Below are positions 5,901 through 54,752 of a stretch of 64,000 bases of DNA, one piece after another. Location: NCBI RefSeq assembly GCF_028641065.1, contig NC_073387.1, positions 23,374,001 to 23,438,000 of the forward strand, written 5' to 3'. Position numbers and translations under genes: made by a program. The DNA is from Leucoraja erinacea (lineage: Eukaryota). Every line of letters starts with the position of its first letter. Positions within the stretch are counted from its first letter, which is position 1. Below the pieces are notes generated by a model. It did not search any database. It saw only the letters and a program-made list of their open reading frames with translations, and had not been told where the DNA came from.

Positions 5901-8033
5901 TCTTCACTCCAGGCACAAAAGGAACTGGTCAAGTTCCTGTATTCCTCCTCCTGCCCGTTCCTTACAAATGCCACTATCGCTGTATCATCTGAATATTTCT
6001 GGTTAACTTTGGCAGGTCCAAGCTCCCCCTTCAGCCGGTCAACACTGCTGGGGCTGACATTGAGGTGGTGCAGACATATAAATACCTTGGAGTGCACCTT
6101 GATAACAAACTGGACTGGTCTGTCAACTCTGACTCCCTCTACAAAAAAGGCCAGAGCAGACTCTTTTTCCTCAGAAGGCTCAAATCCTTCAATGTGTGTA
6201 GTGATATGCTGCACATGTTTTACAACACTGTGGTCGCAAGTGTTATTTTCTACGCTGTTGTCTGCTGGGGCAACAGCATTAGTGAAAAAAACAACAAGAA
6301 GCTGGTCAAATTGGTTAAACGAGCTAGCTCAGTGCTGGAGGGGAGAGTAGACTCTGGGATGGATGTGCTTGAGAGGCGTATGAGGCACAAGGTGCAGGTC
6401 ATCCTGAAAAACCCCGGGCATCCCCTCCATGTAATTCTGGAGAGTCAAAAGAGCACTCGGAACAACAACCGGCTCCTCTCCCTGCCCTGTAGAACGGAGC
6501 GGTTCAGGAGATCCTTCACCCCTGCAGCCATTAGATTTTATAATTCGGACCGCTAGGCTGTAGGGGGATGCATTTTTGCAATTTTTAATTTTTAATTGTT
6601 AATTATTGGTCTTTTTAAGTATTTATTGCTCTCAGGTAGTGTCCACAGTGTATTCTATGTATTTTCTGTCTGCGTTCGTTTTGAATCTGTGGGTTTGTTG
6701 GTTGGGGGCTTCTAGACATCTGAATTTCCCTGAGGGGATCAATAAAGTATTAAAAAAAAAAAAACCTCCTAGCATCCTCCTCGCATCTCACACTGCCACC
6801 CAGCTTTGTGTCATCCGCAAATTTAGAGATGTTACATTTAATTCCCTCGTCTAAATCGTTAATATACAATGTAAACAACTGGAGTCCCAGCACCGAGCCT
6901 TGCGGCACCCCCCTAGTCACTGCCTGCCATTCTGAAAAGGACCCATTAATTCCTACTCTTTGCTTCCTGTCTGCCAACCAGTTCTCTATCCATGTCAATA
7001 CCCTACCCCCAATACCATGTGCTCTAATTTTGCACACTAAGCTCTTGTGTGGGACCTTGCCAAACGGTTTTTGAAGGTCCATATACACCACATCCACTGG
7101 CTCTCCCTTATCCATTCTATTGGTTACATCCTCAAAAAATAGCAAAAGATTATTCAAGCAGGATATCCCCTTCATAAATCCATGCTGACTTTGACCGATC
7201 CCATCATTACTTCACAAATGCGCTGTTATAACATCTTTAATAATCGACTCCAGCATCTTCCCCACTACCGACGTAAGGCTAACTGGTCCATAATTCCCAG
7301 TTTTCTCTCTCCGTCCTTTCTTAAAAATGATCACCAATGCATCCACGATTTCTTGGGCCACCTCCTTGAGTACTCTGGGATGCAGACCATCTGGCTCTGG
7401 GGATTTATCTGCCTTCAGTCCCAACAGATTACCTAACACCATTTTGACTAATGTGGATTCCCTTCAGTTCCTCCCTCTCACTAGACCTTCAGTCCCCTAG
7501 TATTTCCAGGAGATTCTTTGTATCTTCCTTAATGAATACAGAACCAAAGTACTCGTTTAACTGTTCTGCCATTTCCATGTTTCCCATTATAAATTCACCC
7601 GTCTCTGTCTGTAAGGGATCTCCATTCGTCTTCACTAATCTTTTCCTTTTTTACATACATCTAGTGACTTTTAGTCAGTTTTTATATTCCCTGCAAGCTT
7701 TCTTTCATGCACCCCCCCCCCTCTTAATTAACCCCTTTGTCCTCCTCTGTAGAGTTCTAAATTTCTCCCAGTCCTCTGGTTTGCCGCTTCTTCTGTATTA
7801 TACATTTATATGCCTTTTCCGTGGCTTTAACACTATCCTTGACTTCCCTCGTCAGCCATGGTTGAGCCCAGTTTTGTTTTTTCGCCAGACAAGGATGTCC
7901 AATTTCTAGAGTTCGTCCATGCGGTCTTTAAATCTTCGCCATTGCATCTCCACCGTCAACCCTTTAAGTATAATTTGCCTGTCTATCCTAGCCAATTCCC
8001 ATCACGTACCTTCAAAGTCTCATTTATTCAAGT
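2906..8033 (-). mobile_element. Degenerate CR1 LINE (ORF2), split by a Rex1/Babar insertion at about 3596-6763
   Basis: RT fragments on the minus strand ([35 protein letters not shown]); gaaacatagaaa tail at 2906; the sequence resumes in register after 6763. Confidence 0.9.
3596..6763 (+). mobile_element. Near full-length Rex1/Babar-type non-LTR retrotransposon (APE + RT), disrupted
   Basis: APE motifs (GNVNS, FTETW, GDFNH, TLDLCY, SDH) in 3666-4613; RT motifs (KAAGPDG, LDPLQFAY, SSAFNTI, GAPQG) in 5172-5828; C-terminus 6065-6556; AATAAA + poly(A) at 6741-6763; stops, frameshifts and an internal inversion. Confidence 0.92.
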
Positions 8034-10433: not shown

Positions 10434-10546
10434 ATGTCAGCGAACGAGCAGCAGAACTCTTTGCTGCGAGACTCTCAACAGGATATAGCCAGCAACTCGG
10501 ATGTGGAGGTGAGAGGGGCTACCCCTGCTGCAGTGCCAGTCCACAG
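10434..10546 (+). CDS. CD74: CD74 exon 1 coding part: cytoplasmic tail MSANEQQNSLLRDSQQDIASNSDVEVRGATPAAVPVH(R)
   Basis: accATG Kozak context; in-frame TAA upstream at 10392; acidic-dileucine-like EQQNSLL; donor CAG|GTAAGG; phase 2 matches exon 2. Confidence 0.88.
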
Positions 10547-16500: not shown

Positions 16501-19500
16501 TTAACTTGACATCATGCCAACACCAACACTGTGGGCCGAAGAGCCCGCTTCGGTGTTGTACTGTTCTATGTACACTGGCCTTATATTCTCTGGAATTTGG
16601 AAGGATGAGAGGGGATCTTATAGAAACATATAAAATCCAGCCATGATCACATTGTATGGCGGTGCTGGCTCGAAGGGCCGAATGGCCTACTTCTGCATCT
16701 ATTGTCTATTGTCTATTGTCTAAAATTCTTAAGGGATTGGACAGGCTAGATGCAGGAAAAATGTTCCCCATGTATGTAAGTCCAGAACCAGGGGTCACAG
16801 TTTAAGGATAAGGGGTAGGCCATTTTGGACTGAGATAAGGAACAAGTTTATCGCCCAGAGAGTTGTGAATCTGTGGAATTCTCTGCCACAGAAGGCAGTG
16901 GAGGCCAATCCACTGGATGTTTTCAAGAGAGTTAGATATCGATCTTAGGGCTAATGGAATCAAGGGATATGGGGTAAAAGCATGAACGGGGAACTGATTC
17001 TGGATGATCTGCCATGATCATATTGAAAGGCGGTGCTGGCTCGACGGGCTGAATGGCCTACTGCTGCACCTATTTTCTATGTTTAAGAAAGAACTGCAGA
17101 CGCTGGAAAAATCGAAGGTAGACAAAAATGCTGGAGGAACTCAACGGGTGAGGCAGCATCTATGAAGAGGAGGAAAAGGCGACGTTTCAGGTCGACACCC
17201 TTCTCCAGACTGGTCGAGACCCTTCTTCTATGTTTCCATGTTAATTTTTGTGTCTACCATGATCTGTAGACACTCTCCACCTCCACCAGGGGTCAGTGGT
17301 GAGACATAAATCTATTTTCTGGAAACTCATGCAACTGTGGGGGGGGGGGGGGGTGAAGAACTGGAGCCGAGGAAAGACCAGGACCAAGCAGGAACGATCA
17401 CTAATGATTTCAGGCAGGGTCGTGCCTGGTTGTCCATTGCTGGCCAGGGAAGGTGTGAGGGGAATGGACTGGGGATGTTTCGGGCCAGGACCTTCGTCAG
17501 ACTAGTGGTGTAAACTGTTGGTCCTTGCCCTCCAAGCGATGGGTTTGTCAGGATGGAAGGTTGACCATGAATCCTGTAATTCATGTCCTCCCTCCCCTCC
17601 ACTCGCACTACCTGTCTCCCCACATTAAGTCAATGGAATAAAGCATGGGTTAGGGATGCAGAATCCAAGGCATAAAGTCAGGAGAGGGGGCAGATGGTAT
17701 GAAGGAGATGGAAACAGTTGTCTTGGAAGGGCCACTAACGTCCCTCAGAGGAAGAAATCTGCCTTCCATACCCTGCCCGGGCCTACACCCACCATCGTGG
17801 GTGACGCTTAACTTCTCTAGACTGGGTCTCACGAGGAACAATTAGTGATAGTCAATAAATCCAACGATGCCAGACATCTGAACAATTTACGCTTGGACCA
17901 CCAAGGCCTACGGGGTCTCCCGGTTGCTAAGGGGTATAAATAAGGGGTAAGCCATTTAGAACGGAGACGAGGAAACACTTTTTCTTACAGAGAGTTGAGA
18001 GTCTGTGGAGGCCAGTTCTCTGGATACTTTCAAGAGACAGCTAGATAGGGCAGAGTCAGGGGATATGGGGAGAAGGCAGGAACGGGGTACTGATTGGGGA
18101 TAATCAGCCATGATCACATTGAATGGCGGTGCTGGCTTGAAGGGCCGAATGGCCTATTCCTGCAACTATTGTCTTTTATCTATTGCGGACCAATTCTTAA
18201 CTCGTCTTCCATCCATATCCCTGGATAAGGGAGTTGGGACCAGTGTAGATTGGGCATCTTGGTCGGCATGGATGAGTTGGGCTGAAGGGCCTGTTTGCGT
18301 GCTGTGTAGGATTCTGGAGAGTAGCTGAGAGACTTTGGAAGGAGGGAAATGAGAGAGAGAGAGAGAGATCCTGACATCTATTGGATTCACAGCTCATTGT
18401 TATTTGTTGTGCCATCCAGTGGATGTTTTACCAGTTCCACCAGTTTCACTTCCAGGGAATTACCCCATTACTAATAATAATTAATTGACACAGACCTTCG
18501 GAAAGTCCCTTGCAAATTACAGGGAAACTTCCTGGACAAATTCACTGCGTCGCACATCACTAATACCACCAATCATACCCAAATCCCTCCAAAAGTTGTG
18601 GACTTTATCTGGCTCTAAACATTATTCCCTTTAACTTGTATCTGTACACTGCAGATGGCTTGCTTGTAATCATGTACAGTTTTTCCACTGACTGGATAGC
18701 ATGCAACAAAAGCTTTCCACTGTACCTCGGTACACGTGACAATAAACTGAACTGAACGGCAATGGGACTAGTGTAAATGAGTGATAGTGACTGGGTGGGC
18801 TGAAGGGCCTGTTTGTATGTTGTGTCTCTCTGTGGATCAGGGGCCATACACACACCTCTCAGATGTTGTACATGGCCAGTGAACCATTGAGGTGCTCCCC
18901 CTCCTCACCATTGCCGTCTGCCTTCCAGGAGCCTGAGCTGGGGCCGAGGGCTGCTCTACGCTGGCGTATCCATCCTGGTGGCCATGCTCATCGCCGGCCA
19001 GGTGGTCGGCATCATGTTCCTGATGAAGCAACAGGACAAGATAGACGGGCTGCAGAAGACCACGAGACGTCTTGAGAGCAAGTACTCGGCGAGCCGCGGA
19101 CCATTCAGTAAGCAGAGCCGCCAGCAATGATCAACTTACAATGATCAACTGATTGGGTGGTTGATTGGGTGATTCATTGATTTATTGAGTGCTTGATTGA
19201 TTGACATTAATTGATTAATCTGTTTAATTAGATGATTGATTGATCAATTTACTGATTGATCAATTTATTGGTGACTGATTGATTCATTAATTAAATGATT
19301 CATTGGTTGATTGGGAATTACATAGAAACATAGAAAAATAAAAATTAGGTGCAGGAGTAGGCCATTCGGCCCTTCGAGCCTGCACCGCCATTCAATATGA
19401 TCATGGCTGATCATCCAACTCAGTATCCTGTACCTGCCTTCTCTCCATACCCCCTGATCCCCTTAGCCACAAGGGCCACATCTAACTCCCTCTTAAATAT

Positions 19501-22500
19501 AGCCAATGAACTGTGGCCTCAACTACCTTCTGTGGCAGAGAATTCCAGAGATTCACCACTCTCAGTGTGAAAAATGTTTTTCTCATCTCGGTCTTGAAGG
19601 ATTTCCCCCTTATCCTTAAGCTGTGACCCCTTGTCCTGGACTTCCCCAACATCGGGAACAATCTTCCTGCATCTAGCCTGTCCAACCCCTTAAGAATTTT
19701 GTAAGTTTCTATAAGATCCCCCCTCAATCTCCTAAATTCTAGCGAGTATAAACTGAGTCTATCCAGTCTTTCTTCATATGGAAGTCCTGACGTCCCAGGA
19801 ATCAGTCTGGTGAACCTTCTCTGCACTCCCTCTATGGCAATAACGTCCTTCCTCAGATTTGGAGACCATAACTGTACGCAGTACTCCAGGTGTGGTCTCA
19901 CCAAGACCCTGTCCAACTGCAGTAGAACCTCCCTGCTCCTATACTCAAATCGTTTTGCTATGAATGCTAACATACCATTCGCTTTCTTCACTGCCTGCTG
20001 CACCTGCATGCCTACCTTCAATGACTGGTGTACCATGACACCCAGGTCTCGCTGCATCTCCCCTTTTCCTAATCGACATTCCTTGATTGATTAATTGGCT
20101 GTGGATTGATTGACCGATTGATTAGTTGATTAATTTATTTGTTAATTGATTGATTGATTGCCTGATGATTGGTCCACTACTTGCTTGTTGGCACCATAAG
20201 GCAGCAGCTCTACCCGCTGCGCAACCATTGGGCTGGGGTTGTGAGGGGATTTCAAAAAAAACATTGGCCCACTCAGTTTGTTCCTCATTCTGTTTATTCG
20301 CCTGCACTGAATTTCCCCAGAACCCTCTCTGAGCTAAGTAAAATCCTCAACGCACACACACACACACTCTGAGGGGGGAGCCCCACGGTGAGCTGTTTGC
20401 TAGAATTGGGGATCCGCCTGGCTTTAGAAGTATGATTCACTTTGGTTTTCATCAGCTCAGATTAGATACACCGGTGCTGTTTATTCTGCAATAGAACATA
20501 GTACAGCATAGCACTGGAACAGGCCCTTCGGCCCACAATGTCCATGCCAAACATGATGGCAAGTCAAACTAATCTCCTCTGCCTGCACGTGATCCATATC
20601 CCGACATTCCCTACACTTCCAGGTGCCTATCTAAAAGCCTCTTAAACACCACTAGCATATCTGCCTCCACTACCCACCCCTGAAAGCGCCTTTCAGGCAC
20701 CCACCACCCTCTGTGTGTAAAAAAAAATCCTTCAAACTTTAGAATCATAAATCATACTGTAGAATCTCCTTTCAACTTTCCCCCTCTCACCTTCAAGCTG
20801 TGGCATCTAGTGTTGTACATTTCCATTCAGGGATAAAGGTTCTGACCCCATCTATGCCTCTGATAATTTTATATACTTCTATCATGTCTCTCCCAAGCAT
20901 CTTGAGGTTCCAGAGAAAACAATCCAAGTCTGTCCAACCTCTCCTTGTAGCTGAAACCCTCCAATACAGGCAGCATTCCGGTGAACAGGGAAAAGAGCGG
21001 GGGAGGGGGGGGGGGGGGGGGGGGGGGGATTGGGGGAAGGGAGAGGGGGGTGAGGGTTGTGAAGCTGCATCTACAGTTCCATGTGTCTCCATTTTTTTCT
21101 TGTATCTTTTTATCCTTCAGGACCGAAGCCAATCATGCACCTGAGACCGATGATGATGGATCTGCCCATTTCCTACATCAACCCCAATGCCGACGCACCA
21201 AAGGTGACTTCTCGCCGAGACATTATGGAATATTAACTCCCCTTCCCATTCCCACACCGACCTTTCTGCCCTGGGCCTCCTCCGTTCCCCTCATTAAGTC
21301 TTAAAGGAATAAAGCAAGGGTTCGGGATTCAGAAGCTAAGACACAAAGGCTGTGGAGGGGGCAGATGGAATGAGGTTCATGTTCATGTCCTTAAATCATA
21401 GAAACAGAATTAGGCTATTTGGCCATTCAAGTCGTGGCTTGACTTCATTCAATCATTCAATCATGGCTGATCTATCTTTGCCTCTCAATCCTATTCTCCT
21501 GTCTTCATCCCACATCTTCACAGCTTAAGGATACGGGGGAAATCCTTTAAAACCGAGATGAGGAGAACTTTTTTCACACAGAGAGTGGTGAATCTCTGGA
21601 ACTCTCTGCCACAGAGGGTAGTTGAGGCCAGTTCATTGCCTATATTTAAGAGGGAGTTAGATGTGGCCCTTGTGGCCAAGGGGATCAGAGGGTATGGAGA
21701 AAAGGCAGGTACGGGATACTGAGTTGGATGATCAGCCATGATCATATTAAATGGCGGTGCAGGCTCGAAGGGCCAAATGGCCTACTCCTGCACCTAATTT
21801 CTATGTTTCTATGTTTCTATATCCTTTGACACCCATAGTAAACAAGATCCGTCTTAAAAATATTAATCAATGGCCTTCTTAGCCGACTGTGGCAATGAAT
21901 TCCATAGATTCACCACCCTCTGGCTAAAGAAATTCATCCTCATCTCTATTTGAAAGCTACATCCTTTTATTCTGAGCGAAAACATCCTCTCCACGTCCAC
22001 TCGGTCCAGGCCTTTCACAATTTGGTGAGTTCAATGAAGGCTCCCCCCATCCTCCTAAACTCCAGCGAGTGCAGGCCCAGTGCCGACAAACGCTCATCAT
22101 ACGTTAACCCAATTATCCCCGGGATCATTGTCGTAAACCTCCCCTGGACCCTCTCCAACGCCAGCACTTCCTTCCTCAGATCTGACGCCCAAAACTAGTC
22201 ACAATAACGGAGATGGAAGCAGTTGGTCTAGGTGTAGAGATAGGTAGCATGGTCCACTCATCTGGTGTCCATGGATGGGATGGGTACCATGGATGTCCTT
22301 GGAAGGTCCACTAACATTCCTCAGAGGAGGAAATCTGCCTTAGCGACCCTGCCTGAGCCTACACCCGCCAACGCGGTTAACGTCTCTCGAGACTGGGTTC
22401 CATGGAGCTGTATTTGTCACTTGTGCAACTGCACTGTGAAATTCATTTCGCATTATTACACATGCGGGCGCCACCATGTTTTGCCGCAAAATCCAAAAGT

Positions 22501-25500
22501 CCAAAGTCCCGTCGACCCGATTGACTCAATATATCGGAGCCGTTCCCCCGAACCTGTATCCCTCTCCTCACCCCGGCCATCTTTGTGACCCTGGGGGGCC
22601 TCCTGCAGCCCACCTTGAAGGGGCTGGAGGCATTCCCCCGGTTCACCCACCCACCGCCCCTCGCTCCTCGCATCCAACGTCTCCAGTGGCTTCTTCCCGG
22701 TCACACCCATCGACAAAGCCTTCGGGCGGGCACTGTGGCCATGGCACCTCCCACAAGGTACACAATATACAAGGGCAATTAGGGGTGGGCAACAAATGCT
22801 GGCCTTTGGTGCCACATACCGACATCCGAACACTTGTGCTTGTTCCGCCAAGGCCTGCTGGAACTAAACATTTTAACTCCCATTCCCGCTCCCACACTCA
22901 TTCCTGGGCCTCCATCATTGCCCGAGTGAGGCCACATGCAAACTGTAGGAACAACAGCTCATGTTCCGCTTGGGTAGCTGACAACCCAGCAGTATGAACG
23001 TTGAATTCTCCAATTTTAAATCATACCCCCCTCTCTCTTTTGAGTGTTCCACCCCTACCCCTAGTTATTCCTACCACCATCTCCCAGCCACCCCCTCAGT
23101 CACCCCTTCCCCTACCCCGTACATTCATATCCCATCCCTGAGATTCCCATTTCACTTTTATCCCCCCCCCCCCCCCCCCCCCCCAGTTCCCTTCCACCCA
23201 CATCCCTCCCTCTGACTTTATGCTTCACTCCGCCTTTTCTCTCTTTCTCTGACTCCCCTTTGTCTCTTTTCAGCTTTTATCACTTTCTCCCACCAATCTG
23301 GCCATCACTCCCCCCCCCCCCCCAATCTGTATCCACCTCTCACTCACCAGGTTTTGTCCCACCCCCACCTCTCTCTTCCAGCTTCCCCCCCATCCGTCAG
23401 CCTGAAGAAGGGTCCCAATCGGGAAAGGTCACCTGTCCTTTCCCTCCACAAATGCTGCCTGACCCACTGAATTCCTCTTGCACTTTGTGTTTTTGGTTTA
23501 GTTAACTTTAGTTTAGTTTAGTTTATTGTCACGTGTACCGAGGTACAGTGAAAAATGTTCAGTGCAAGATAAAGTCCAGTCAAGTCTGATTAAAGATAGT
23601 CTCCAATAAGGTAGATGGTAGCTCAGGACCACTCTTTAGTTGTTGATAGGATGGTTCGGTTGCCTGACAACAGCTGGGAAGAAACTGTCCCTGAATCTGG
23701 AGGTGTGTGTTTTCACACTTCTGTACCTCTTGCCTGATGGCAGCACTGCAGGAACTGCAGGTATCTTGTGTTGCCAGACGTAACTGGACCAGTGTGTGTT
23801 GGTTGGGCGATAACGGAAATGTCACCGTCTTTATCCTTGTCTTTCCTCAGCTTCCCACACCTAAATCTACAACTTCGCCAATGACCGTGATGGAACAAGT
23901 TCATCAGCTGCTGAAGGTACCTCTCCAACCTATTACAGAACAGGTGGCACGGTGGCACAGCGGGAGAGTTGCTGCCTCCCAACTCCTGAGACCTGGGTCC
24001 GATCCTGACTACGGGAGCTGGGTGTGAATGTGTGGGGTTTGCACGTTCTTCCTGGGACTGCGTGGTTTCCTCCGGGTGCTCCTGTTTCCTCCCAAACTCA
24101 AAGACGTGCGGGTTTGGATAATCCCTCGTGTCGGATAGAAAACAGCTGATTAGTGGTCGGCATGGACTCAGTGGGTCAAATGGCCTCTTTCCACGCTGTA
24201 TCTCTAAACTGAAACTAAACTTTATCTTAAAATTATTTGGAACAAAGGGTGGAGTTTATTTAATCTTGTCACGTCTACTGAGATACAATGAAAAAAGCTG
24301 TGTACTGCATGCTATCCAGGAACTGGTGATATATGAGTACAACCATGCCACACACAAGTACAGTGGATGGTTTAGTTTCGACTCGCAGCATGGAAATGGG
24401 CCCTTCGGCCCACTGAGTCCATGCCGACCATCGATCACCCGTTCACACGTTCTTTCTTGTCCCACTTTCTCATCCACTCCCTGAACCTACAATCTGACAG
24501 GCCTTTGGGATGTGTGTGGAAACTGGAGCACTCGTGAGGCAGCAGCTCTACCCGCTGCGGCCTCCCCCCCCTGTTGCCCCCACGTTGACGGGACCTTTTG
24601 CCCGATCGTTAGGCTGATCGTTACTGCTCATTTTTTCCTCTCAGGATGGAAACCGAACAGAAGGGATTCCGGAAATGATTGGAAGCTTCTCCGACAACCT
24701 CCAGCTGCTGAAACAGAATCTGAACGAATCCGACTGGAAGGTTGGTGTTTAATTGTCCAACGTGAGAATTCCTCCAGCACTTTGCGTACGCCGCAAGACT
24801 CGAGTATCTCCAGATCCTCGTGATGAGGAGGAATTTATTTTGCCAGAGGGTGGTGAATCTGTGGAATTTATTGCCACAGATGGTGGTGGAGGCCAAGTCA
24901 TTGGGTATTTTTAAAGCGGAGATTGATAGATTCTTGATTAGTGAGGGTGTCAAAGGTTACGGGGAGAAGGCAAAAGAATGGGGTTGAAAGGGAAAGATAG
25001 ATCAGCCACAATTGAATGGTGGAGTAGACTCGATGGGCTGAATGGCCTAGTTCTGCTCCTATGATATGAACTAGTTCTGCTCCTGTGGTATGAACCTCAA
25101 TCATATCCACAAGATACAGGTAGCGGGAGCTCTATCGTTGTGTGATAGTCTTGGCTACGTCCAACACCTTAAACTGACTGGACTATCTTGGTCGGTGAGG
25201 TTGCTGTAGGTCAGGATGACAAGGAAATTGAAGAGCATGCAGTGAAGACTTTGTCCTCAGGCAGACAGAAAAGATAGATCAGCCGTGATTGAATGGTGGG
25301 GTAGACTCGATAGGCAAAATGGCCTAAATGTGCTCCTATGTCTTATGAACATGAACTATTCACTGCCAACCCCTGAAATATGAACCTGGTGACGTGTGTT
25401 TTTTTTGGTGTTTTTTAGGATTTTGAATCTTGGCTGCAGAACTGGTTCCTCTTCCAACTTGTTCAGCCTGAGAAGAAGACTGCACCAACCCAGGCACCCC

Positions 25501-28500
25501 AAGTACTGCCTCGCCATGAGATGCCATCCAGAGGTACGTGACAACCTTCTTCTCCCCATCCCAATGAGACCTTGCTCCAAGATCCTTGGCTTGCCGGCTT
25601 GAGTTACAGGGAGAGGTTGGACAGCTTTGACATTTTTTTTGTATTGGAGCCTTGGAGGATGAGGGGTGACCTTATTTAGACTTTGCACTTTAGTTTAGAC
25701 TAGGGTGGCACAGTGGCGGGACAGTAGAGTTGCTGCCCCACGGCGCCAGAGACCCAGGTTCGATCGGGTGAGGTCTGTGCGGAGTTTGTACATTCTCCCT
25801 GTGACCACGTGGGTTTTCTCCGGGTGCTCCGGGTTCCTCCCACACCCCAAGGATGTGCGGGTTTGTAGGTTAATTGGCTTTGGTAAAAATTGTAAATTGT
25901 TCCTAGTGTGTAGGATATTGCTAGTGTACGGGGGTGATTGCTGTTCGGCATTGATTCAGTGGATCGAAGGGCCTGTTTCCGCGCTGTATGTTAAAGTCCA
26001 AAGAGTGGTCTTTTTGGGATGTGCAAGATCATGAGGGGCATGTTTAAAGTGAACGCCACAGTCTTTTTCCCAAGGGAATAGGATTTTAAAGATAGACACA
26101 AAGTGCTGGAATAACTCAACGGGTCAGGCAGCATCTCTGGAGAACATGGATCGGTGATGTTTTGTGTCGGGACCCTTCTTTAGATGATCTTAAAACCAGA
26201 GGGCACAGGCTTTAAGATGAACCTCAGGGACAAATTTTCACTCAAAGGGTAGTCCATATCTGGAAGGAGCTGCCAGAGGAAGCTATTGAAGTCACGTGGT
26301 TATGCAGGGATATGGATCACGTGCAGGGAGGGAAGATTAGTTTAACTTGGTTTCATATTTGGCACAGGCATTGTGGGCCGAAGGGCCTGTCCCTGTGTTG
26401 TACTGAAGAAGGGTCTCGACCTGAAACGTTGCCAATCCATGTTCTCCAGTGGTTTACTGACCCGCTGAGTTACTCCAGCACTTTGTGTCATCCTGTGCTG
26501 CGCCACTCAATGTTCTACTAGTTATGTTATCCCACTTTTCATCTATTCATCCACTTCCTACACACCAGGGGGGATTCACAGTGGGCTAATGAACCAATTA
26601 ACCTACAAACCTGCATGGGCATGTCTTTGGGATGTGGAAGGAAACCAATGGACCCGAAGGAAAATCATGTGGTCACTGGGAGAACATACAAAGTACAAAC
26701 ACTGATGCACACATGCACGCACACTCGCACACAAGCACACACGCATACACACACTCGCGCAGATGCACACACTCGCGCACATGCACACACACACACCCGC
26801 TCGCGAAAACACACATTCACGCGCACACACACGCGCACACACAGGCACACACATGCACACGCGCGCGCACACACGCACACGCGCGCGCACACACGCATAC
26901 ACAGTACTCGAGGTCAGGATTGAACCTGGGTCTCTGGTGCTGTGAGGTAACGGCTCTACCCACATTGTCTTTGAGGGATTAGATTTCAGAGTTGATGACA
27001 ATAAGGACATATTCCCTTTATCATTGTGGACGGCTTGATAGTAATCATGTATAGTCTTTCCGCTGAACGGATGGCATGCAACAAAAAGCTTTTCACTGTA
27101 CCTAAACTAAACTAAAGTAAGGTCACATCATTATTGGAGTGGGAGGCAGTGTCAAGCAGAGCAAACGTGCAAATCGCAGTGTGTATCTTCGGATGTTATT
27201 GTGTCACAATAATGTTTTGTTAGTTGCCTTGAAGTGACCAAATGATTCTTGTCTCCACAGGGAGGAACGTCTTCTCCAGCATGGCCATGAGCCCACTGCT
27301 CAACCTTCCTATCGCAGAAAGTGCCTCCAAGCAATCCGGTCTTGCTGAAGTCGTTCCTCATAAAAGGGGTAACTATGCCGACGAGTATTTCAGAACATAG
27401 AACAGTACAACAGAGGAACGGGCCCTTCGGCCCACAATGTCCGTGCTGACCATGATGCCAAGACCAACTCTTATGTACCTGCATGTAATCCATAGCCCTC
27501 CATTCCTCACATGTCCATCCATGCACCCATCCAAAAGCCTCATAAACATTACTGTCATATCTGCCTCCTCCACCACCACCCCTGGCAGCAAGTTCCATGC
27601 ATCCCCCACCATCTGTGTAACATACCTGCCCAGCTCATCTCCTTTATAATTGGTCCCGCTCACTTTAATCATGTGCGCTCTGGATTCATACAGTATGGAA
27701 ATAAGCCCTTTGGCCCAACTCATCAAAGTCCACCAAGATGCCCCATCTAAGCTCGTCCCATTTGCCTGCGTTTGGCTCATATCCTTTTAAACTTTTCCTT
27801 TCCATTTTCACCCAGGTAAAATCAGCTCTTCCCTTATCCTCCAACGCTCCAGAGAAAACAATCCAAGTCTGTCCAGCCTCTCCCTGTAACTAATCCAGGC
27901 ATCATTCTGGTCAACCTCCTCTCCAAAAGCATCCACATCCTTCCTGTAATGGGGCGATCAGAACTGCACGCAATACTCCAAATGCACTGACCAAAGTCCT
28001 ACAGAGCTGCATTATGACTTCCTGACTCTTATACTCAAAGCCCTGACTGATGAAGGCAAGATTACTGTACGCCTTCTATACCGCTCAAAGCTATGTCCAC
28101 AACTCTCTGCAATTTCCTGCGGTCTTGGATGTTCTGGGGAGCCTCAGGCTCTGCAGGACACTGATGTGACCGCTGTTATTTTTCCTCACGCAGTTTTCCA
28201 TGCAGAGACTGAGTGTGAGAGACTGAAAAGGGTGGCGGAAATTAAGCCCGGAACATTCCAGCCAAGCTGTGACAAGGATGGGAACTATGAGCCAAAGCAA
28301 TGCTGGCCAAGCACTGGCTACTGCTGGTGTTCCTATCCCAATGGGACCAAGATTGAAGAGACCGCAACCAGGAAACAACTGGATAATTGTCAAAGTAGGC
28401 TTGAGTTTCTTCAGCTACCTGTTGTACTGAGCCATAGTCACAGTTATAGAACCATAGGCATAGAGTCATTGACCCATATAGTCATAGAGCTACAGTCAGA

Positions 28501-31500: not shown

Positions 31501-32994
31501 GAGTGTATAAACATTCTATCTGATCTTCTTGTGAATCTCCAACCCTGTAGAGAAAACAAGCCAAACTTGTTCAACTTCTCCTTATCATCCGGGCATCATT
31601 CTGATAAACCTCCTCTGCACCCTCTCAATAGCCTCCACATCCTTCCTGTAATAAGTTCATAAGTTCACATCATAGCAACAGAATTAGGCCATTTGGCCCA
31701 TCAAGGCTACTCCGCCATCCAGTCATGGTGGTCACGGTGTCGCAGTGGTAGAGTTGCTGCCTTACAGCGAACGCAGCGCTGGGGACCCGGGTTCGATCCT
31801 GACTACGGGTGCTGTCTGTACGGAGTTTGTACGTTCTCCCTGTGATCTGCATGGGTTTTCTCCGAGATCTTCGGTTTCTACCCACACTCCAAAGATGTAC
31901 AGGTTTGTAGGTTAATTGGTTTGGTAAATGTAAAAATTGTCCCTGGTGTGTGTAGGATAGTGTTAATGTGCAGGGATCGCTGGTCGGCGCGGACCTGATG
32001 GGCTGAAGGGCCTGTTTCTGCTCTGTATCTCTAAACTAAACATTCTCCTGCCTTCTCCCCATAACCTTTAACGCCCATACTAATCAAGAATCTGTCAATC
32101 TTCACCTTAAGAATACCCATAGAAGGCCTCCACCGCCATCTGTGGCAATGAATTCCACAGATTCATCACCTTCTGATGAAATAAATCCCTCCTCATCTCC
32201 TTTCCAACCGTACGTTCTTTTATTCTGAGGCTTTGGTTTCTGGCCCTAGACTCTCTCACTAGTGCAACCATCCTCTCCACATCCACTCTATCCGGGCCTT
32301 TCACTATCGGTAAGTTTCAATGAGGGTCCCTACTCATCCTTCTAAACTCCAGCGAGTACAGGCCCAGTCAAACGCAATGGAAGGCGGCAAGTAGCACTGT
32401 ATTCGATACTCTAAATGTGTCCGAACTAAAGTGCTAGGTGTTGTACTTAACAGAGGTCCCTCTTCTCGGCCCTGCCTCACCATGGACATGGAATGAAGGA
32501 ACTGCAAGCACACAAAACAGGAGCTAACATAACCATTCACTCCCTTTCCCTCGCTCCAACCACCCATAACACAGCTGATCCAACCACCCATAACACAGCT
32601 GATCTAACCACCCATAACACAGCTGATCTAACCACTGCATTCTTCATAAGTTCATCAATTCATAAGTTCTAGGAGCAGAATTAGGCCATTCGGCCCATCA
32701 AGTCTACTCTGCAATTCAGTCATGGCTGATCTATCTTTCCCTCTCAACAACATTCTCCTGCCTTCTCCTCATAACCTTTGACACCCTTACTAATCAAGAA
32801 TCTGTCAATCTCCTCCTTAAAAATCCCCAATGACTTGGTCTCCACAGCCCTGCCTTGTCTTGCAATCTCTCAGCTCCTTGCTTGATGAAACTACCCAATA
32901 TTTAAAGATAAAGGCTTTGCTGAAACAAGTTTGTTGAGATATCTCCAAAACTAACAATGTTTTTCTCTTTTTTCTTACAGCTTTTGAGGACTAA
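10434..32994 (+). CDS. CD74: CD74 / MHC class II invariant chain, spliced gene model join(10434-10546,18929-19107,21121-21203,23851-23916,24645-24740,25419-25533,27261-27368,28194-28394,29233-29274,32981-32994), 338 aa
   Basis: All introns are GT-AG with matching phases (2,1,0,0,0,1,1,1,1). Total 1017 nt, open to TAA. Domain order and motifs parallel mammalian Ii: TM 'GRGLLYAGVSILVAMLIAGQ', 'GSFSDNLQLLKQNLNESDWK-DFESWLQNWFLFQL', and a thyroglobulin-1 domain with QC and CWC motifs. Confidence 0.95.
10648..11105. mobile_element. Non-autonomous hAT-like element, CpG-rich, 100 bp into CD74 intron 1
   Basis: TIR TAGGGTTGCCAACT / AGTTGGAAAACTTA; perfect 8-bp TSD ACCGCAAC at 10640-10647 and 11106-11113. 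Confidence 0.85.
12725..13137 (+). mobile_element. Rex1/Babar-like LINE 3' fragment (high-copy; further copies at about 9905-10218, 34085-34630, 56815-57210)
   Basis: IIKDQSHPGH..FSPLPS..RYRSVKTHTSRFRD.SFP C-terminal peptide and shared 3' UTR. Confidence 0.75.
13211..13242 (-). promoter_or_regulatory. X1-X2-Y module in CD74 intron 1
   Basis: Minus strand reads CCTGGCAACTGGTGAGTCAacagtcagCCAAT. Confidence 0.7.
18441..18532. promoter_or_regulatory. Intron-1 enhancer-like cluster: EICE plus three NF-kB-like sites plus octamer-like site
   Basis: GGAAGTGAAACTG (minus, 18441-18453); GGGAATTACCCC 18455-18466; GGGACTTTCC (minus, 18500-18509); TTGCAAAT 18510-18517; GGGAAACTTCC 18522-18532. Confidence 0.65.
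18929..19107 (+). CDS. CD74: CD74 exon 2: transmembrane anchor SLSWGRGLLYAGVSILVAMLIAGQVVGIMFLMKQQDKIDGLQKTTRRLESKYSASRGPF
   Basis: Acceptor ccttccag, donor gtaagc. Strong match to human [37 protein letters not shown]. Confidence 0.97.
19321..20075 (-). mobile_element. Young 5'-truncated CR1 inserted into a (GATT)n microsatellite in CD74 intron 2
   Basis: ORF 19482-20057; (catagaaa)n tail; near-identical to 39284-40030; GATT repeats on both flanks. Confidence 0.92.
21121..21203 (+). CDS. CD74: CD74 exon 3: CLIP region (R)PKPIMHLRPMMMDLPISYINPNADAPK
   Basis: Long polypyrimidine tract + cag; donor AAG|gtgact; phase 1-0 as in mammalian exon 3; PKP plus Met-rich core with Pro. Confidence 0.93.
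22822..23495 (+). mobile_element. Penelope-like element 3' fragment (GIY-YIG C-terminus + terminal repeat)
   Basis: Decayed EHL..RQG...HFNS..HSH...EQQLMFRLG..QP..MNVEFSNF peptide, followed by a C-rich tract and the ctgaagaagggtc terminal motif. Confidence 0.75.
23851..23916 (+). CDS. CD74: CD74 exon 4: LPTPKSTTSPMTVMEQVHQLLK
   Basis: Acceptor ctttcctcag, donor AAG|gtacct; resembles human ...NMTEDHVMHLLQ; phase 0-0. Confidence 0.92.
24645..24740 (+). CDS. CD74: CD74 exon 5: trimerisation domain DGNRTEGIPEMIGSFSDNLQLLKQNLNESDWK
   Basis: 96-nt exon; matches human ...[23 protein letters not shown]; acceptor ttttttcctctcag, donor AAG|gttggt. Confidence 0.96.
25419..25533 (+). CDS. CD74: CD74 exon 6: DFESWLQNWFLFQLVQPEKKTAPTQAPQVLPRHEMPSR
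   Basis: Matches human VFESWMHHWLLFEM...KPTDAPP; acceptor ttttttag, donor GAG|gtacgt; phase 0-1. Confidence 0.95.
26705..26902. repeat. (CA/CG) alternating purine-pyrimidine microsatellite inside a SINE
   Basis: cacacacgcgcgcacac runs. Confidence 0.9.
27261..27368 (+). CDS. CD74: CD74 additional exon with CLIP-like peptide (G)RNVFSSMAMSPLLNLPIAESASKQSGLAEVVPHKR
   Basis: Acceptor ttcttgtctccacag, donor GGG|gtaact. 108 nt, phase 1-1, open in the required frame, in non-repetitive sequence. No counterpart in the mammalian exon structure. Confidence 0.8.
28194..28394 (+). CDS. CD74: CD74 thyroglobulin type-1 exon (mammalian 6b / p41 equivalent) VFHAETECERLKRVAEIKPGTFQPSCDKDGNYEPKQCWPSTGYCWCSYPNGTKIEETATRKQLDNCQ
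   Basis: Six Cys; PxCD..G.Y.P.QC...GYCWC..PNG signature; phase 1-1; alternative in-frame acceptor at 28206. Confidence 0.97.
28410..28700. repeat. Degenerate (catagt/catagag)n low-complexity repeat just after the thyroglobulin exon
   Basis: Repeated catagtcatagag words. Confidence 0.8.
29233..29274 (+). CDS. CD74: CD74 penultimate exon (S)YQKPDDPNFSGFG
   Basis: Acceptor ctttctttccaccttcag, donor G|gtgagt; resembles human LEDPSSGLG. Confidence 0.88.
31125..31425 (+). mobile_element. tRNA-derived V-SINE (HE1-like), representative copy; many more, e.g. about 11919, 25703, 29402(-), 30180, 31728, 45868, 50717
   Basis: A-box ggtggcgcagcgg; B-box gggttcgatcc; V-domain ...cgtgggttttctccggg...ggtttcctcccac; CR1-like 3' tail and (ctaaa)n. 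Confidence 0.88.
32557..32636. repeat. 24-bp tandem repeat x3
   Basis: aaccacccataacacagctgatc(c/t) repeated. Confidence 0.85.
32981..32994 (+). CDS. CD74: CD74 last exon coding part (A)FED-stop
   Basis: Branch-like ctaac at 32951, long T/C tract, cag, then a very short coding tail as in mammalian CD74, followed by AT-rich UTR-like sequence. Confidence 0.8.
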
Positions 32995-52403: not shown

Positions 52404-54752
52404 TTCAGATTCAGATTCAGATTCAGATTCAATTTTAATTGTCATTGTCAGTGTACAGTACAGAGACAACGAAATGCATTTAGCATCTCCCTTGAAGAGC
52501 GACATAGCAAACGATTTGAATAAAAAAATAATAAGTATCCGGGGGGGGGGGGGGTGGGTGATTGGTAGTCACCGAGGTACGTTGTTGAGTAGAGTGACAG
52601 CCGCCGGAAAGAAGCTGTTCCTCGACCTGCTGGTTCGGCAACGGAGAGACCTGTAGCGCCTCCCGGATGGTAGGAGGGTAAACAGTCCATGGTTGGGGTG
52701 AGAGCAGTCCTTGGCGATGCTGAGCGCCCTCCACAGACAGCGCTTGCTTTGGACAGACTCAATGGAGGGGAGCGTGGAACCGGTGATGCGTTGGGCAATT
52801 TTCACCACCCTCTGCAATGCCTCCCGGTCGGAGACAGAGCAGTTGCCATACCATACTGTGATGCAGTTGGTAAGGATGCTCTCGATGGTGCAGCGGTAGA
52901 AGTTCACCAGGATCTGAGGAGACAGATGGACCTTCTTCAGTCTCCTCAGGAAGAAGAGACGCTGATGAGCCTTCTTGATCAGAGTAGAGGTATTGTGGGT
53001 CCAAGAGAGGTCATCGGAGATGTTGACTCCCAGGAACCTGAAGCTAGAAACACGTTCCACCTCCGTCCCGTTAATGTGGATGGGGGTGTGTGTGCCGCCT
53101 CTGGACTTCCTGAAGTCAACAATGAGCTCCTTGGTCTTCTTGGAGTTAAGGGCCAGGTTGTTGTCAGCGCACCATGCTGCTAAGTGCTGGACCTCCTCCC
53201 TGTAGGCCAGTTCATCGTTGTTGCTGATGAGGCCAATCACCGTTGTATCATCTGCATACTTGATGATGGTGTTAGTACCATGTACAGGTGTGCAGTCATA
53301 GGTGAAGAGGGGGGGGGCTCAGCACACAGCCCTGAGGAACGCCGGTGTTCAGGGTGAGGGTTGAAGAGGTGTGCTTGTCTAACCTCACAGACTGGGGTCT
53401 GTTGTTTAGAAAGTCCAGTATCCAGTTGCAGAGGGAGGGGTCGATGCCCAGGTTACCGAGTTTGGTGATCAGTTTTGATGGAATAATGGTGTTGAATGCT
53501 GAGCTGTAATCGATGAACAGCATTCTTACATAAGTGTCTCTGTTGTTGAGGTGGGAGAGAGCGGAGTGAAGTGCCGTTGAGATGGCATCCTCCGTACTCC
53601 TGTTCTTGTGGTAGGCAAACTGATAGGGATCCCGTGTGGGGGGTAGGCAGCTTTTGAGGTGTGCCAGGACCAGCCTCTCGAAGCACTTGGTGATGATGGG
53701 GGTAAGTGCAACTGGGCGGAAGTCGTTGAGGCTTGCCGCAGTAGAGTGTTTTGGCACTGGCACGATGGAGGTGGCTTTAAGGCAAGTGGGGACAACTGCT
53801 TGGGCAAGTGACAGGTTGAAGATGTCAGTCCAGACGTCTGTCAGCTGCGCAGCACAGGCACTGAGCACGCGCCCGGGGATGCCGTCAGGGCCAGCAGCCT
53901 TACGTGCATTAGTCCTACTCAGTGCCATGTACACGTCGTAGGGGGTGAGTGTGAGGGGTTGGTGATCGGCAGGTAGCACAGCCTTGATGGCTGTCTCTAG
54001 ATTGTCCCTGTCGAAGCGGCAATAGAAGTGATTAAGCTCCTCAAGGAAGGAGGCGTCGCTGGATGTGGGGGTGATGTTGGAGGGTCTGTAGTCCGTGATG
54101 GCCTGGATGCCTTGCCACATGCGTCGGGGGTCGGAGTTGTTGTTGAAGTGCTCCTCAATCCTGAGCTTATGGCAGTGCTTGGCCTTCCTGATGCCCCTCT
54201 TCAGGTTAGCCCTGGATGAACTGTAGGCTCGAGCATCGCCTGACCTGAAAGCGGTGTCCCGTGCTTTCAGCAGTAGCCTGACCTCGCTGTTCATCCATGG
54301 CTTCTGATTCGGGTATATGGTCACCTGTTTGAGGGAGGTGACACTATTGATGGTGGAGTTTATAAAGTCCAGAACAGAGGATGTATAGGAATCAATGTCC
54401 GTGTGAGAGTCAAGGGTGGCCTGGGCTGCAAACGCCTTCCAGTCAGTGTTTCCAAAACACTGCTGAAGTGTGAAGTCCGCTTCCTCTGACCAGACTTTAA
54501 CTGTCCTTACAGTTGGTTTAACCCGTCTGATGAGTGGGGAGTACTTAGGGAGCAGGAACAATGAGACGTGATCAGACTGACCAAGGTGGGGGAGGGGGAT
54601 GGCTTTGTAAGCTTCAGCCATGTTGGTGTAGACTTTGTCCAGTGTCTTGTCTACTCTAGTGGGGAAGGATACATGTTGGTGGAATTTGGGGAGTACAGTC
54701 TTCAGGTTGGAGTGATTGAAGTCACCCGCAACAATGAAGGCTGCCTCGGGGT
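52404..54752 (-). mobile_element. 5'-truncated Rex1/Babar-type LINE with (TGAATC)n tail
   Basis: AGDFNH, TLDKVY, SDH, KAAGPDG, DPYQFAY, FIDYSSAFNTI, GVPQG; frameshift in the G-run near 53310; continues in ORF 52569-53240. Short copies with the same tail at about 49671 and 51723. Confidence 0.92.

What the first reader, a model, noticed from the sequence alone, without database searches (positions are those of the whole stretch)
27261..27368. CD74 carries an extra cassette exon encoding a second CLIP-like peptide after the trimerisation domain
Seen: a clean 108-nt phase 1-1 exon between exon 6 and the thyroglobulin exon, translating GRNVFSSMAMSPLLNLPIAES... It aligns with this gene's own exon-3 CLIP (IMHLRPMMMDLPIS vs SMAMSPLL-NLPIA) and with human CLIP (SKMRMATPLLMQALP). 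Known: mammalian CD74 has one CLIP, N-terminal to the trimer domain, and no exon at this position. Cartilaginous fish are generally reported to lack the DM peptide editor. Inference: an invariant chain with two groove-binding peptides, one optional by splicing and flanked by basic residues (PSR-GR, HKR) that could be cleavage sites. It could serve different class II lineages, bind a second class II dimer, or help displace CLIP without DM. I cannot say whether it is already described; I recall CLIP duplication being reported in some teleosts.
Basis: partly seen in the sequence, partly recalled or inferred. Interest (0 to 1): 0.9.

Follow-up and report, generated by a model that had tools for sequence, protein, structure and literature searches.

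The report
Skate CD74 exon copied from CLIP
The extra 108-base exon in this skate's invariant-chain (CD74) gene is real, always spliced in and shared by sharks and rays, and in sharks and stingrays it is a recognisable old copy of the exon for CLIP, the peptide that plugs the MHC class II groove; whether it binds class II is untested.

Summary
The exon at 27261-27368 is real. RNA from the same species joins exon 6 to it. It then joins either the thyroglobulin (Tg) exon or the last exon.

It is not a cassette exon on present evidence:
- Transcript contigs run unbranched through it.
- All 16 transcript-derived proteins of this species hold it.
- All 10 RefSeq isoforms of three carpet sharks keep it. 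Only the Tg exon and a 15-residue tail exon alternate.

It occurs in every elasmobranch CD74 recovered, including the nurse shark cDNA protein in UniProt. It is absent from teleost and tetrapod CD74. So the exon is already public.

The likeness to CLIP is not significant in this skate alone (p=0.18). In sharks and stingrays it is strong, in register and reciprocal:
- Shuffle tests give p down to 0.0002.
- No column-permuted profile out of 2000 reached the observed score.
- The CLIP region is the exon model's best match outside the exon itself.
- Both exons start in intron phase 1.

My reading is an ancient internal duplicate of the CLIP exon, encoding a disordered Met/Pro-rich motif. Its core is conserved, but it is decaying in skates. 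Groove binding is inference only. I found no paper that reports the CLIP likeness, but the two key papers were not readable here.

The parts
27261..27368 (+). Exon 7 of CD74, the finding. It is 108 nt, phase 1-1, and encodes G-RNVFSSMAMSPLLNLPIAESASKQSGLAEVVPHKR-(G/A). The acceptor AG is at 27259-60 and the donor GT at 27369-70. Two nonsynonymous polymorphisms are seen in RNA: 27285 C>T (A>V) and 27319 A>C (E>D).
   Evidence: joints, loose ends, depth, variants; transcript-derived proteins; orthologues.
21121..21203 (+). Exon 3, the CLIP exon. It is 83 nt, starts in phase 1 and ends in phase 0, and encodes (R)PKPIMHLRPMMMDLPISYINPNADAPK. I propose it as the parent or paralogue of exon 7.
   Evidence: likeness statistics.
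25419..25533 (+). Exon 6: the end of the trimerisation domain plus a Pro-rich linker. It ends in phase 1 and joins exon 7.
   Evidence: The loose-end consensus before exon 7 equals its last bases.
28194..28394 (+). Exon 8, the thyroglobulin type-1 domain. It is 201 nt, phase 1-1, and is the exon that is actually alternative.
   Evidence: (6 reads join exon 7 to it; 15 reads bypass it to the last exon).
32981..32994 (+). Start of the last exon: four codons and the stop. The genome reads (A/T)FED*; RNA alleles read FDA* and FEA*.
10434..10546 (+). Coding part of exon 1, from the ATG at 10434. It ends in phase 2.
18929..19107 (+). Exon 2: the transmembrane segment and stalk. It ends in phase 1, which sets the phase-1 start of the CLIP exon.
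23851..23916 (+). Exon 4: linker and start of the trimerisation domain, phase 0-0.
24645..24740 (+). Exon 5: trimerisation domain, phase 0-0.

Best explanation
27261-27368 is a constitutive coding exon (exon 7) of elasmobranch CD74. It is an ancient internal duplicate of the CLIP exon (exon 3), placed after the trimerisation domain and a Pro-rich linker and before the alternatively spliced thyroglobulin exon.

It encodes a disordered Met/Pro-rich linear motif. The consensus is GRKI(F/Y)SS(M/I)(A/V)MxPM(M/L)..LP, followed by a variable tail.

Shown here:
- The exon is spliced in.
- It is conserved from sharks to skates.
- Bony vertebrates lack it.
- It has a significant, in-register, reciprocal likeness to the chondrichthyan CLIP exon.
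- Its core is more conserved than the surrounding linker.

Inferred, not shown:
- The motif keeps some CLIP-like ability to lie in or beside the class II groove. It may serve as a second, weaker or 'spare' groove occupant for each invariant-chain subunit, in animals that have no DM editor.
- In skates, including this window's species, the motif is drifting and may be losing that role.
For: Splicing:
- Joints, loose ends and unbranched 816-847-nt contigs end at 27368.
- Depth on the exon exceeds depth on the Tg exon: 12.5 against 6.1, 57 against 20, and about 30 against about 12.
- 16 transcript-derived proteins of the same species all hold the exon.
- 10 of 10 RefSeq isoforms in three orectolobiform sharks keep it.

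Distribution:
- It is present in 16 of the 17 elasmobranch CD74 clusters recovered, including nurse shark Ii. The exception is one ab initio model, P0166.
- It is absent in 3 teleosts, 1 mammal, 1 bird, 1 turtle, 1 gecko and tuatara. It has no counterpart in human Ii from PDB 8vrw.

CLIP likeness:
- Smith-Waterman against composition-preserving shuffles gives p of 0.0002-0.0006 in Hemitrygon, Mobula, two Scyliorhinus species and Heterodontus. It gives 0.001-0.01 in Carcharodon, Heptranchias, Pristis and Chiloscyllium. The alignments run over up to 24 residues, including the PKA.E.PK end of exon 3.
- The profile-profile score is 27.3 against 13.1 +/- 2.6 for permuted columns, with 0 of 2000 reaching it. 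The CLIP region is the best-matching part of the whole CD74 alignment.
- The exon HMM's best hit outside the exon itself is the CLIP region in each chondrichthyan CD74 (in nearly all at 1-10.6 bits; about 0 or below in Heterodontus, Narcine and Rhincodon), while unrelated proteins and tetrapod or teleost CLIPs score below 0 bits.
- The CLIP HMM hits the exon at E=8.8e-5 in S. canicula.
- Both exons begin in phase 1 with an R/K-rich start.
- The orectolobiform exon is inferred to be 84 nt, against 83 nt for this skate's exon 3.

Constraint and structure:
- The exon core has 56% mean pairwise identity. The linker has 42%, the exon tail 20% and CLIP 70%.
- AlphaFold2 gives coil with pLDDT below 50 for both the CLIP and exon-7 regions.
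Against: - No binding evidence of any kind.
- In the CLIP-aligned register, the position matching the CLIP I/M five residues before the conserved Pro is an invariant Ser.
- In skates, Narcine and the squalomorph P0164 the likeness is not significant (p 0.15-0.94).
- The skate exon evolves fast: 25/36 identical against 207/218 for the upstream part, compared with Amblyraja.
- There is no within-species co-variation of CLIP and the exon (p=0.21).
- The species are related, so the many significant tests are not independent.
- Exon 3 ends in phase 0 and exon 7 in phase 1, so a simple exon copy needs a later shift of the donor site.
- No nucleotide data from other species could be obtained.
Confidence: 0.6

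Rival explanations
1. The exon is a conserved spacer or processing linker, not a CLIP relative. In this reading it is simply the long flexible linker before the thyroglobulin domain. Its Met/Pro-rich core resembles CLIP by convergence, for instance because both are sites for the same endosomal proteases, or by chance. Its job would be reach, or proteolytic release of the C-terminal part.
For: - The region is predicted disordered.
- The tail of the exon and the preceding Pro-rich stretch are poorly conserved.
- The likeness is absent in skates, Narcine and P0164.
- The exon ends in a different phase from exon 3.
- From my memory of the abstract of Criscitiello et al. 2012 (paper not held), the region was described only as an extended linker.
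Against: - Composition-preserving and column-permutation controls reject a purely compositional likeness.
- The likeness is to the chondrichthyan version of the CLIP exon over its whole length, not to generic CLIP features. A shared origin explains that more simply than convergence.
- The core is better conserved than a spacer needs to be.
Confidence: 0.25
2. One reading: an optional cassette exon gives some CD74 isoforms a second groove-binding peptide, regulated by splicing.
For: - The exon is phase 1-1, so skipping it would keep the reading frame.
- One ab initio model (P0166, Chiloscyllium punctatum) lacks it.
Against: - No skipped form appears in contigs, in 16 transcript-derived proteins or in 10 RefSeq isoforms.
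- Contigs run unbranched from upstream exons to the exon's end and branch only after it.
- The exon is present both with and without the Tg exon.
Confidence: 0.05
3. A chance open stretch with splice-like borders, or an exonised repeat, with no coding role.
For: It sits between two interspersed repeats.
Against: It is spliced in RNA, unique within the window, and orthologous in sharks, rays and skates.
Confidence: 0.01

Closest known systems
CLIP region of vertebrate CD74 / invariant chain (exon 3; Pfam PF09307 region)
   Same: Both are Met/Pro-rich linear motifs in a disordered part of the same protein. In sharks the alignment reads hxh(R/K)PMMxDxPxA...PK. Both exons start in phase 1.
   Different: The new exon lies C-terminal to the trimerisation domain rather than N-terminal. 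It has an invariant SS where CLIP has P(I/M). No groove occupancy is shown, and it has no counterpart in bony vertebrates.
Nurse shark Ii (Criscitiello et al. 2012, Dev Comp Immunol 36:521; protein P0192 in UniProt)
   Same: It is the same exon: P0192 reads ...ERKIFSSVAMKSMMVSLPEPAKAPVSK... at this position. From my memory of the abstract, cartilaginous fish Ii was said to have 'an extended linker preceding the thyroglobulin-like domain'.
   Different: As far as I recall, no likeness to CLIP was claimed. I could not read the paper, so this is unverified.
CLIP duplication in CD74a of ostariophysan teleosts (Dijkstra & Yamaguchi 2019, Immunogenetics 71:233; from memory, paper not held)
   Same: An invariant chain with two CLIP-like segments in a DM-less vertebrate.
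   Different: There the copies are, as I recall, adjacent within the CLIP region, before the trimerisation domain, in one teleost clade. Here the copy is a separate exon after the trimerisation domain, in elasmobranchs.
p41/p33 alternative splicing of the thyroglobulin type-1 exon of CD74
   Same: This skate also makes forms with and without the Tg exon. Both the Tg exon and exon 7 are phase 1-1.
   Different: The Tg exon is the optional one. Exon 7 is kept in both forms.

Membership tests
CD74 / MHC class II invariant chain gene | Type II membrane protein with a CLIP-bearing N-terminal region (PF09307), a trimerisation domain (PF08831) and an optional thyroglobulin type-1 domain (PF00086) | tested here: met
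   The window's exons match skate CD74 proteins at 97-100% identity. The orthologues carry PF09307, PF08831 and PF00086. Human Ii (8vrw, 1iie, 1icf) is the top solved match.
[quoted passage not shown] | Sequence relationship to the CLIP segment of the invariant chain | tested here: met
   Met for the exon family in sharks and stingrays. For this skate alone it is inconclusive (p=0.18).
[quoted passage not shown] | Occupies the peptide groove of class II alpha-beta dimers | not testable with these tools
   No elasmobranch class II sequence could be obtained by reference, so no complex was modelled. No binding data exist here.
[quoted passage not shown] | Survives stepwise endosomal proteolysis as a class II-bound fragment | not testable with these tools
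   Needs biochemistry or immunopeptidomics.
Cassette (alternatively included) exon | Both inclusion and skipping isoforms are made | tested here: not met
   Only inclusion was seen. The exon 6 donor was outside the laid stretch, so rare skipping is not excluded.
Ostariophysan-type CLIP duplication | Second CLIP copy adjacent to the first, N-terminal to the trimerisation domain (definition from memory) | tested here: not met
   The copy is a separate exon about 90 residues downstream, after the trimerisation domain.

The most novel reading that the evidence does not exclude
Exon 7 is a working second groove-binding segment. Each elasmobranch invariant chain would then carry two class II plugs, one on each side of the trimerisation domain. 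The second would broaden allele coverage, recruit extra class II dimers, or displace CLIP in cis after C-terminal trimming. That would be a DM-independent route to peptide exchange, about 380 million years old or older, and now being lost in skates.
Probability: 0.25. Interest if true: 0.85.

Novelty: new variant of a known kind. Interest (0 to 1): 0.6.

Why it matters
How class II molecules shed CLIP and load peptides in vertebrates without DM (cartilaginous and ray-finned fishes) is an open question, stated in PMC8010645 and PMC4219347. A conserved, CLIP-derived second motif in the invariant chain of one such group gives a concrete candidate. It can be tested with peptides, deletion mutants and ligand elution.

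It also shows that the 'extended linker' of shark Ii has a recognisable origin: an internal exon duplication. Even if it proves to be only a linker, two points are useful for annotation. The exon is constitutive, and the Tg exon is the optional one.

Tried and rejected
- **Within-species co-evolution or gene conversion between CLIP and exon 7:** no signal (p=0.21).
- **'One CLIP per class II lineage':** the timing and the domain that differs both argue against it.
- **Holocephalan evidence:** P0164 looked like a candidate chimaera, but it groups with Heptranchias. No chimaera CD74 was recovered. A region-restricted search of the exon found only two candidates and says nothing.
- **Thyroglobulin-exon search of the representative library:** swamped by multi-Tg proteins, but it yielded P0070.
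- **ESM Atlas look-up of the exon region:** no usable hit.
- **Literature:** Criscitiello 2012 and Dijkstra & Yamaguchi 2019 are not held. Nine searches found no paper that mentions a second CLIP in cartilaginous fish.
- **The look-up of encoding contigs:** So there are no orthologous DNA sequences, no dN/dS and no check of exon borders in other species.
- I re-ran it with alignment column numbers instead.
- **Spliced protein model:** the window's exons were never joined into one. They were searched and aligned exon by exon, by reference.
- **Complex prediction:** not attempted, because no class II sequence was available by reference.
- **Exon 6 and the reads:** exon 6 was left out of the laid stretch to avoid the 200-nt CA-rich array at 26707-26904.

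Full report
**What is in the sequence.** Positions 27261-27368 are an open 108-nt stretch in phase 1-1. An AG precedes it at 27259-60 and a GT follows at 27369-70. It reads (G)RNVFSSMAMSPLLNLPIAESASKQSGLAEVVPHKR. It lies in a + strand CD74 gene. I mapped the gene exon by exon with a same-species transcript protein and by reading the borders:
- Exon 1 starts at the ATG at 10434 and ends at 10546.
- Exon 2 is 18929-19107.
- Exon 3 (CLIP) is 21121-21203.
- Exon 4 is 23851-23916.
- Exon 5 is 24645-24740.
- Exon 6 is 25419-25533.
- The exon in question is 27261-27368.
- The thyroglobulin exon is 28194-28394.
- The last exon starts at 32981 and encodes four residues and the stop.

The exon is unique in the window and sits between two interspersed repeats. 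All searches used single exons by reference, or database proteins.

**Is it expressed, and is it optional?** I laid two sets of Logan contigs and two raw oligo-dT RNA-seq runs of the same species on 26990-28470.
- The joint 27368>28194 (GT..AG) stands in both contig sets and in 6 raw reads.
- The letters hanging off the left border are the end of exon 6, in both contig sets and in 20 reads.
- In 15 reads the letters hanging off the right border are the start of the last exon, the same letters that follow the Tg exon.

So the exon joins exon 6 on one side, and either the Tg exon or the last exon on the other. The Tg exon is the alternative one.

Contigs of 847 and 816 nt run unbranched from upstream exons to 27368 and break only there. 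Depth on the exon is two to three times that on the Tg exon. The 16 transcript-derived proteins of this species in the protein collection (257 aa; one divergent 262-aa member) all hold the exon. In three orectolobiform sharks, all ten RefSeq isoforms keep it, while the Tg exon and a 15-residue tail exon vary. One ab initio model (P0166) lacks it.

I left exon 6 out of the laid stretch to avoid a CA-rich array. Rare skipping is therefore not excluded, but 'cassette exon' is not supported.

**Distribution.** A search with the Tg exon found a skate CD74 (P0070) that holds the exon. Searches from it found 18 chondrichthyan CD74 clusters (one of them the window species' own transcripts) from these lineages:
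- Batoids: Rajiformes, Myliobatiformes, Torpediniformes and Rhinopristiformes.
- Sharks: Lamniformes, Carcharhiniformes, Orectolobiformes, Heterodontiformes, Hexanchiformes and one unnamed squalomorph.
- The set includes the nurse shark Ii protein in UniProt.

All but P0166 have the exon. Three teleosts, a pika, a turtle, a bird, a gecko and tuatara lack it. Human Ii in PDB 8vrw has nothing opposite it.

The unnamed P0164 groups with Heptranchias, not outside the elasmobranchs. I therefore have no chimaera. The exon dates at least to the shark-ray ancestor. The window's species is a skate close to Amblyraja radiata (207/218 identical upstream of the exon).

**Is it CLIP-like?** In this skate alone, no. 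The best local alignment of the exon to its own CLIP exon scores 21, against 17.6 +/- 3.7 for shuffles (p=0.18). The two other skates, Narcine and P0164 are likewise not significant.

In sharks and stingrays the picture changes.
- S. canicula reads MRPMMVDMPVA-ADAKAKSPK against IRPMMMDLPIAYIDPKMEHPK.
- Hemitrygon reads MAMKPMLQVLPLSVDQPKASEMPK against MHMRPMIMDLPMSYIDPKA-EAPK.
- Composition-preserving shuffles give p of 0.0002-0.0006 in five species and 0.001-0.01 in four more.
- A profile-profile alignment of the two alignment blocks scores 27.3, against 13.1 +/- 2.6 after permuting columns. None of 2000 permutations reached it. Scanning the whole CD74 alignment, the CLIP block is the best match.
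- An HMM of the exon finds the CLIP region as its best hit outside the exon itself in each chondrichthyan CD74, in nearly all at 1 to 10.6 bits (about 0 or below in Heterodontus, Narcine and Rhincodon), always in the same register. About 150 unrelated proteins, and the CLIP regions of tetrapods and teleosts, score below zero.
- The reverse search, with the CLIP HMM, hits the exon at E=8.8e-5 in S. canicula.

Two conclusions follow. The likeness is to the chondrichthyan CLIP exon over most of its length, not to a generic CLIP pattern.

Both exons start in phase 1 with an R/K-rich beginning. In orectolobiforms, comparison of isoforms implies an exon of 84 nt, against 83 nt for this skate's exon 3. 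I read this as an old internal duplication of the CLIP exon whose donor site later shifted.

There is no sign that the two copies co-vary within species (p=0.21). The likeness is therefore inherited rather than refreshed.

**Constraint.** Mean pairwise identities across 15 species:

| Region | Identity |
|---|---|
| CLIP exon | 0.70 |
| Trimerisation domain | 0.64 |
| Tg domain | 0.63 |
| Exon-7 core (first 18 columns) | 0.56 |
| Pro-rich linker before the exon | 0.42 |
| Exon-7 tail | 0.20 |

The core is under more constraint than a spacer would need.

In skates the exon changes much faster than the rest of the protein: 25/36 against 207/218, and 18/36 against 188/218. Both polymorphisms seen in the exon in RNA are nonsynonymous (A/V at 27285, E/D at 27319).

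AlphaFold2 with the 15-sequence alignment gives coil at pLDDT below 50 for both the CLIP region and exon 7. The model is poor overall, so this shows only that no fold is predicted.

**How it most likely works.**
- *Shown:* a constitutive, conserved, disordered, CLIP-derived motif sits on the far side of the trimerisation domain, tethered by a Pro-rich linker of about 22 residues.
- *Inferred:* it retains some ability to lie in or beside the class II groove, as a spare or second plug. Flexible methionines and a central proline are what make CLIP promiscuous, and the exon keeps them.
- *Against this:* the invariant SS where CLIP has a hydrophobic residue, the decay in skates, and the complete lack of binding data.
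- *The 'one CLIP per lineage' idea:* it fits poorly. The two shark class II lineages arose after the shark-ray split and differ mainly in the Ig-like domain (PMC8010645), whereas the exon is older.
- *Main rival:* a conserved linker or protease-processing module whose likeness to CLIP is convergent.

**Known or new.** The exon is already public, in nurse shark Ii and in RefSeq models. From my memory of the abstract, Criscitiello et al. 2012 described an extended linker before the Tg-like domain in cartilaginous fish. Also from memory, Dijkstra & Yamaguchi 2019 reported a duplicated CLIP region in ostariophysan CD74a. Neither paper could be read here. Nine literature searches found nothing on a second CLIP in cartilaginous fish. 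I therefore class the CLIP origin of this exon as a new variant of a known kind, with real uncertainty about whether it has been noted before.

**Limits.**
So there is no orthologous DNA, no dN/dS and no direct check of exon borders elsewhere.
- No class II sequence was available by reference, so no complex was modelled.
- The earlier notes of this scan near the gene concern promoter and enhancer elements and did not bear on this finding.

Noticed in passing
window 32981-32994: The C-terminus after the Tg domain or exon 7 is only four residues in skates. It is polymorphic: the genome reads FED*, RNA alleles read FDA* and FEA*. Many sharks instead have an extra, alternatively spliced 15-residue tail exon with an SGL motif like the mammalian tail.
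   Followed up: partly
window 27285 and 27319: There are two nonsynonymous polymorphisms in exon 7 (A/V, E/D). All four combinations occur among transcript-derived proteins. No synonymous variant was listed in the exon.
   Followed up: partly
window 27022-27103 and 27392-27677: Interspersed repeats with many copies in the window flank the exon closely. They attract RNA reads from other loci, with depth up to 237 in contigs.
   Followed up: no
window 26707-26904: An imperfect CA/CG-rich microsatellite array of about 200 nt lies in the intron before the exon.
   Followed up: no
P0158 (Narcine bancroftii) and P0199 (Coregonus): The Narcine model lacks about 22 residues at the start of the trimerisation domain. 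The 538-aa Coregonus 'unnamed protein product' fuses leucine-rich repeats to CD74. Both look like gene-model errors.
   Followed up: no
window 52572-53318 (-) and 6753-7463 (-): Long open frames with reverse-transcriptase-like sequence lie downstream of CD74 and in its first intron. They look like LINE remnants.
   Followed up: no
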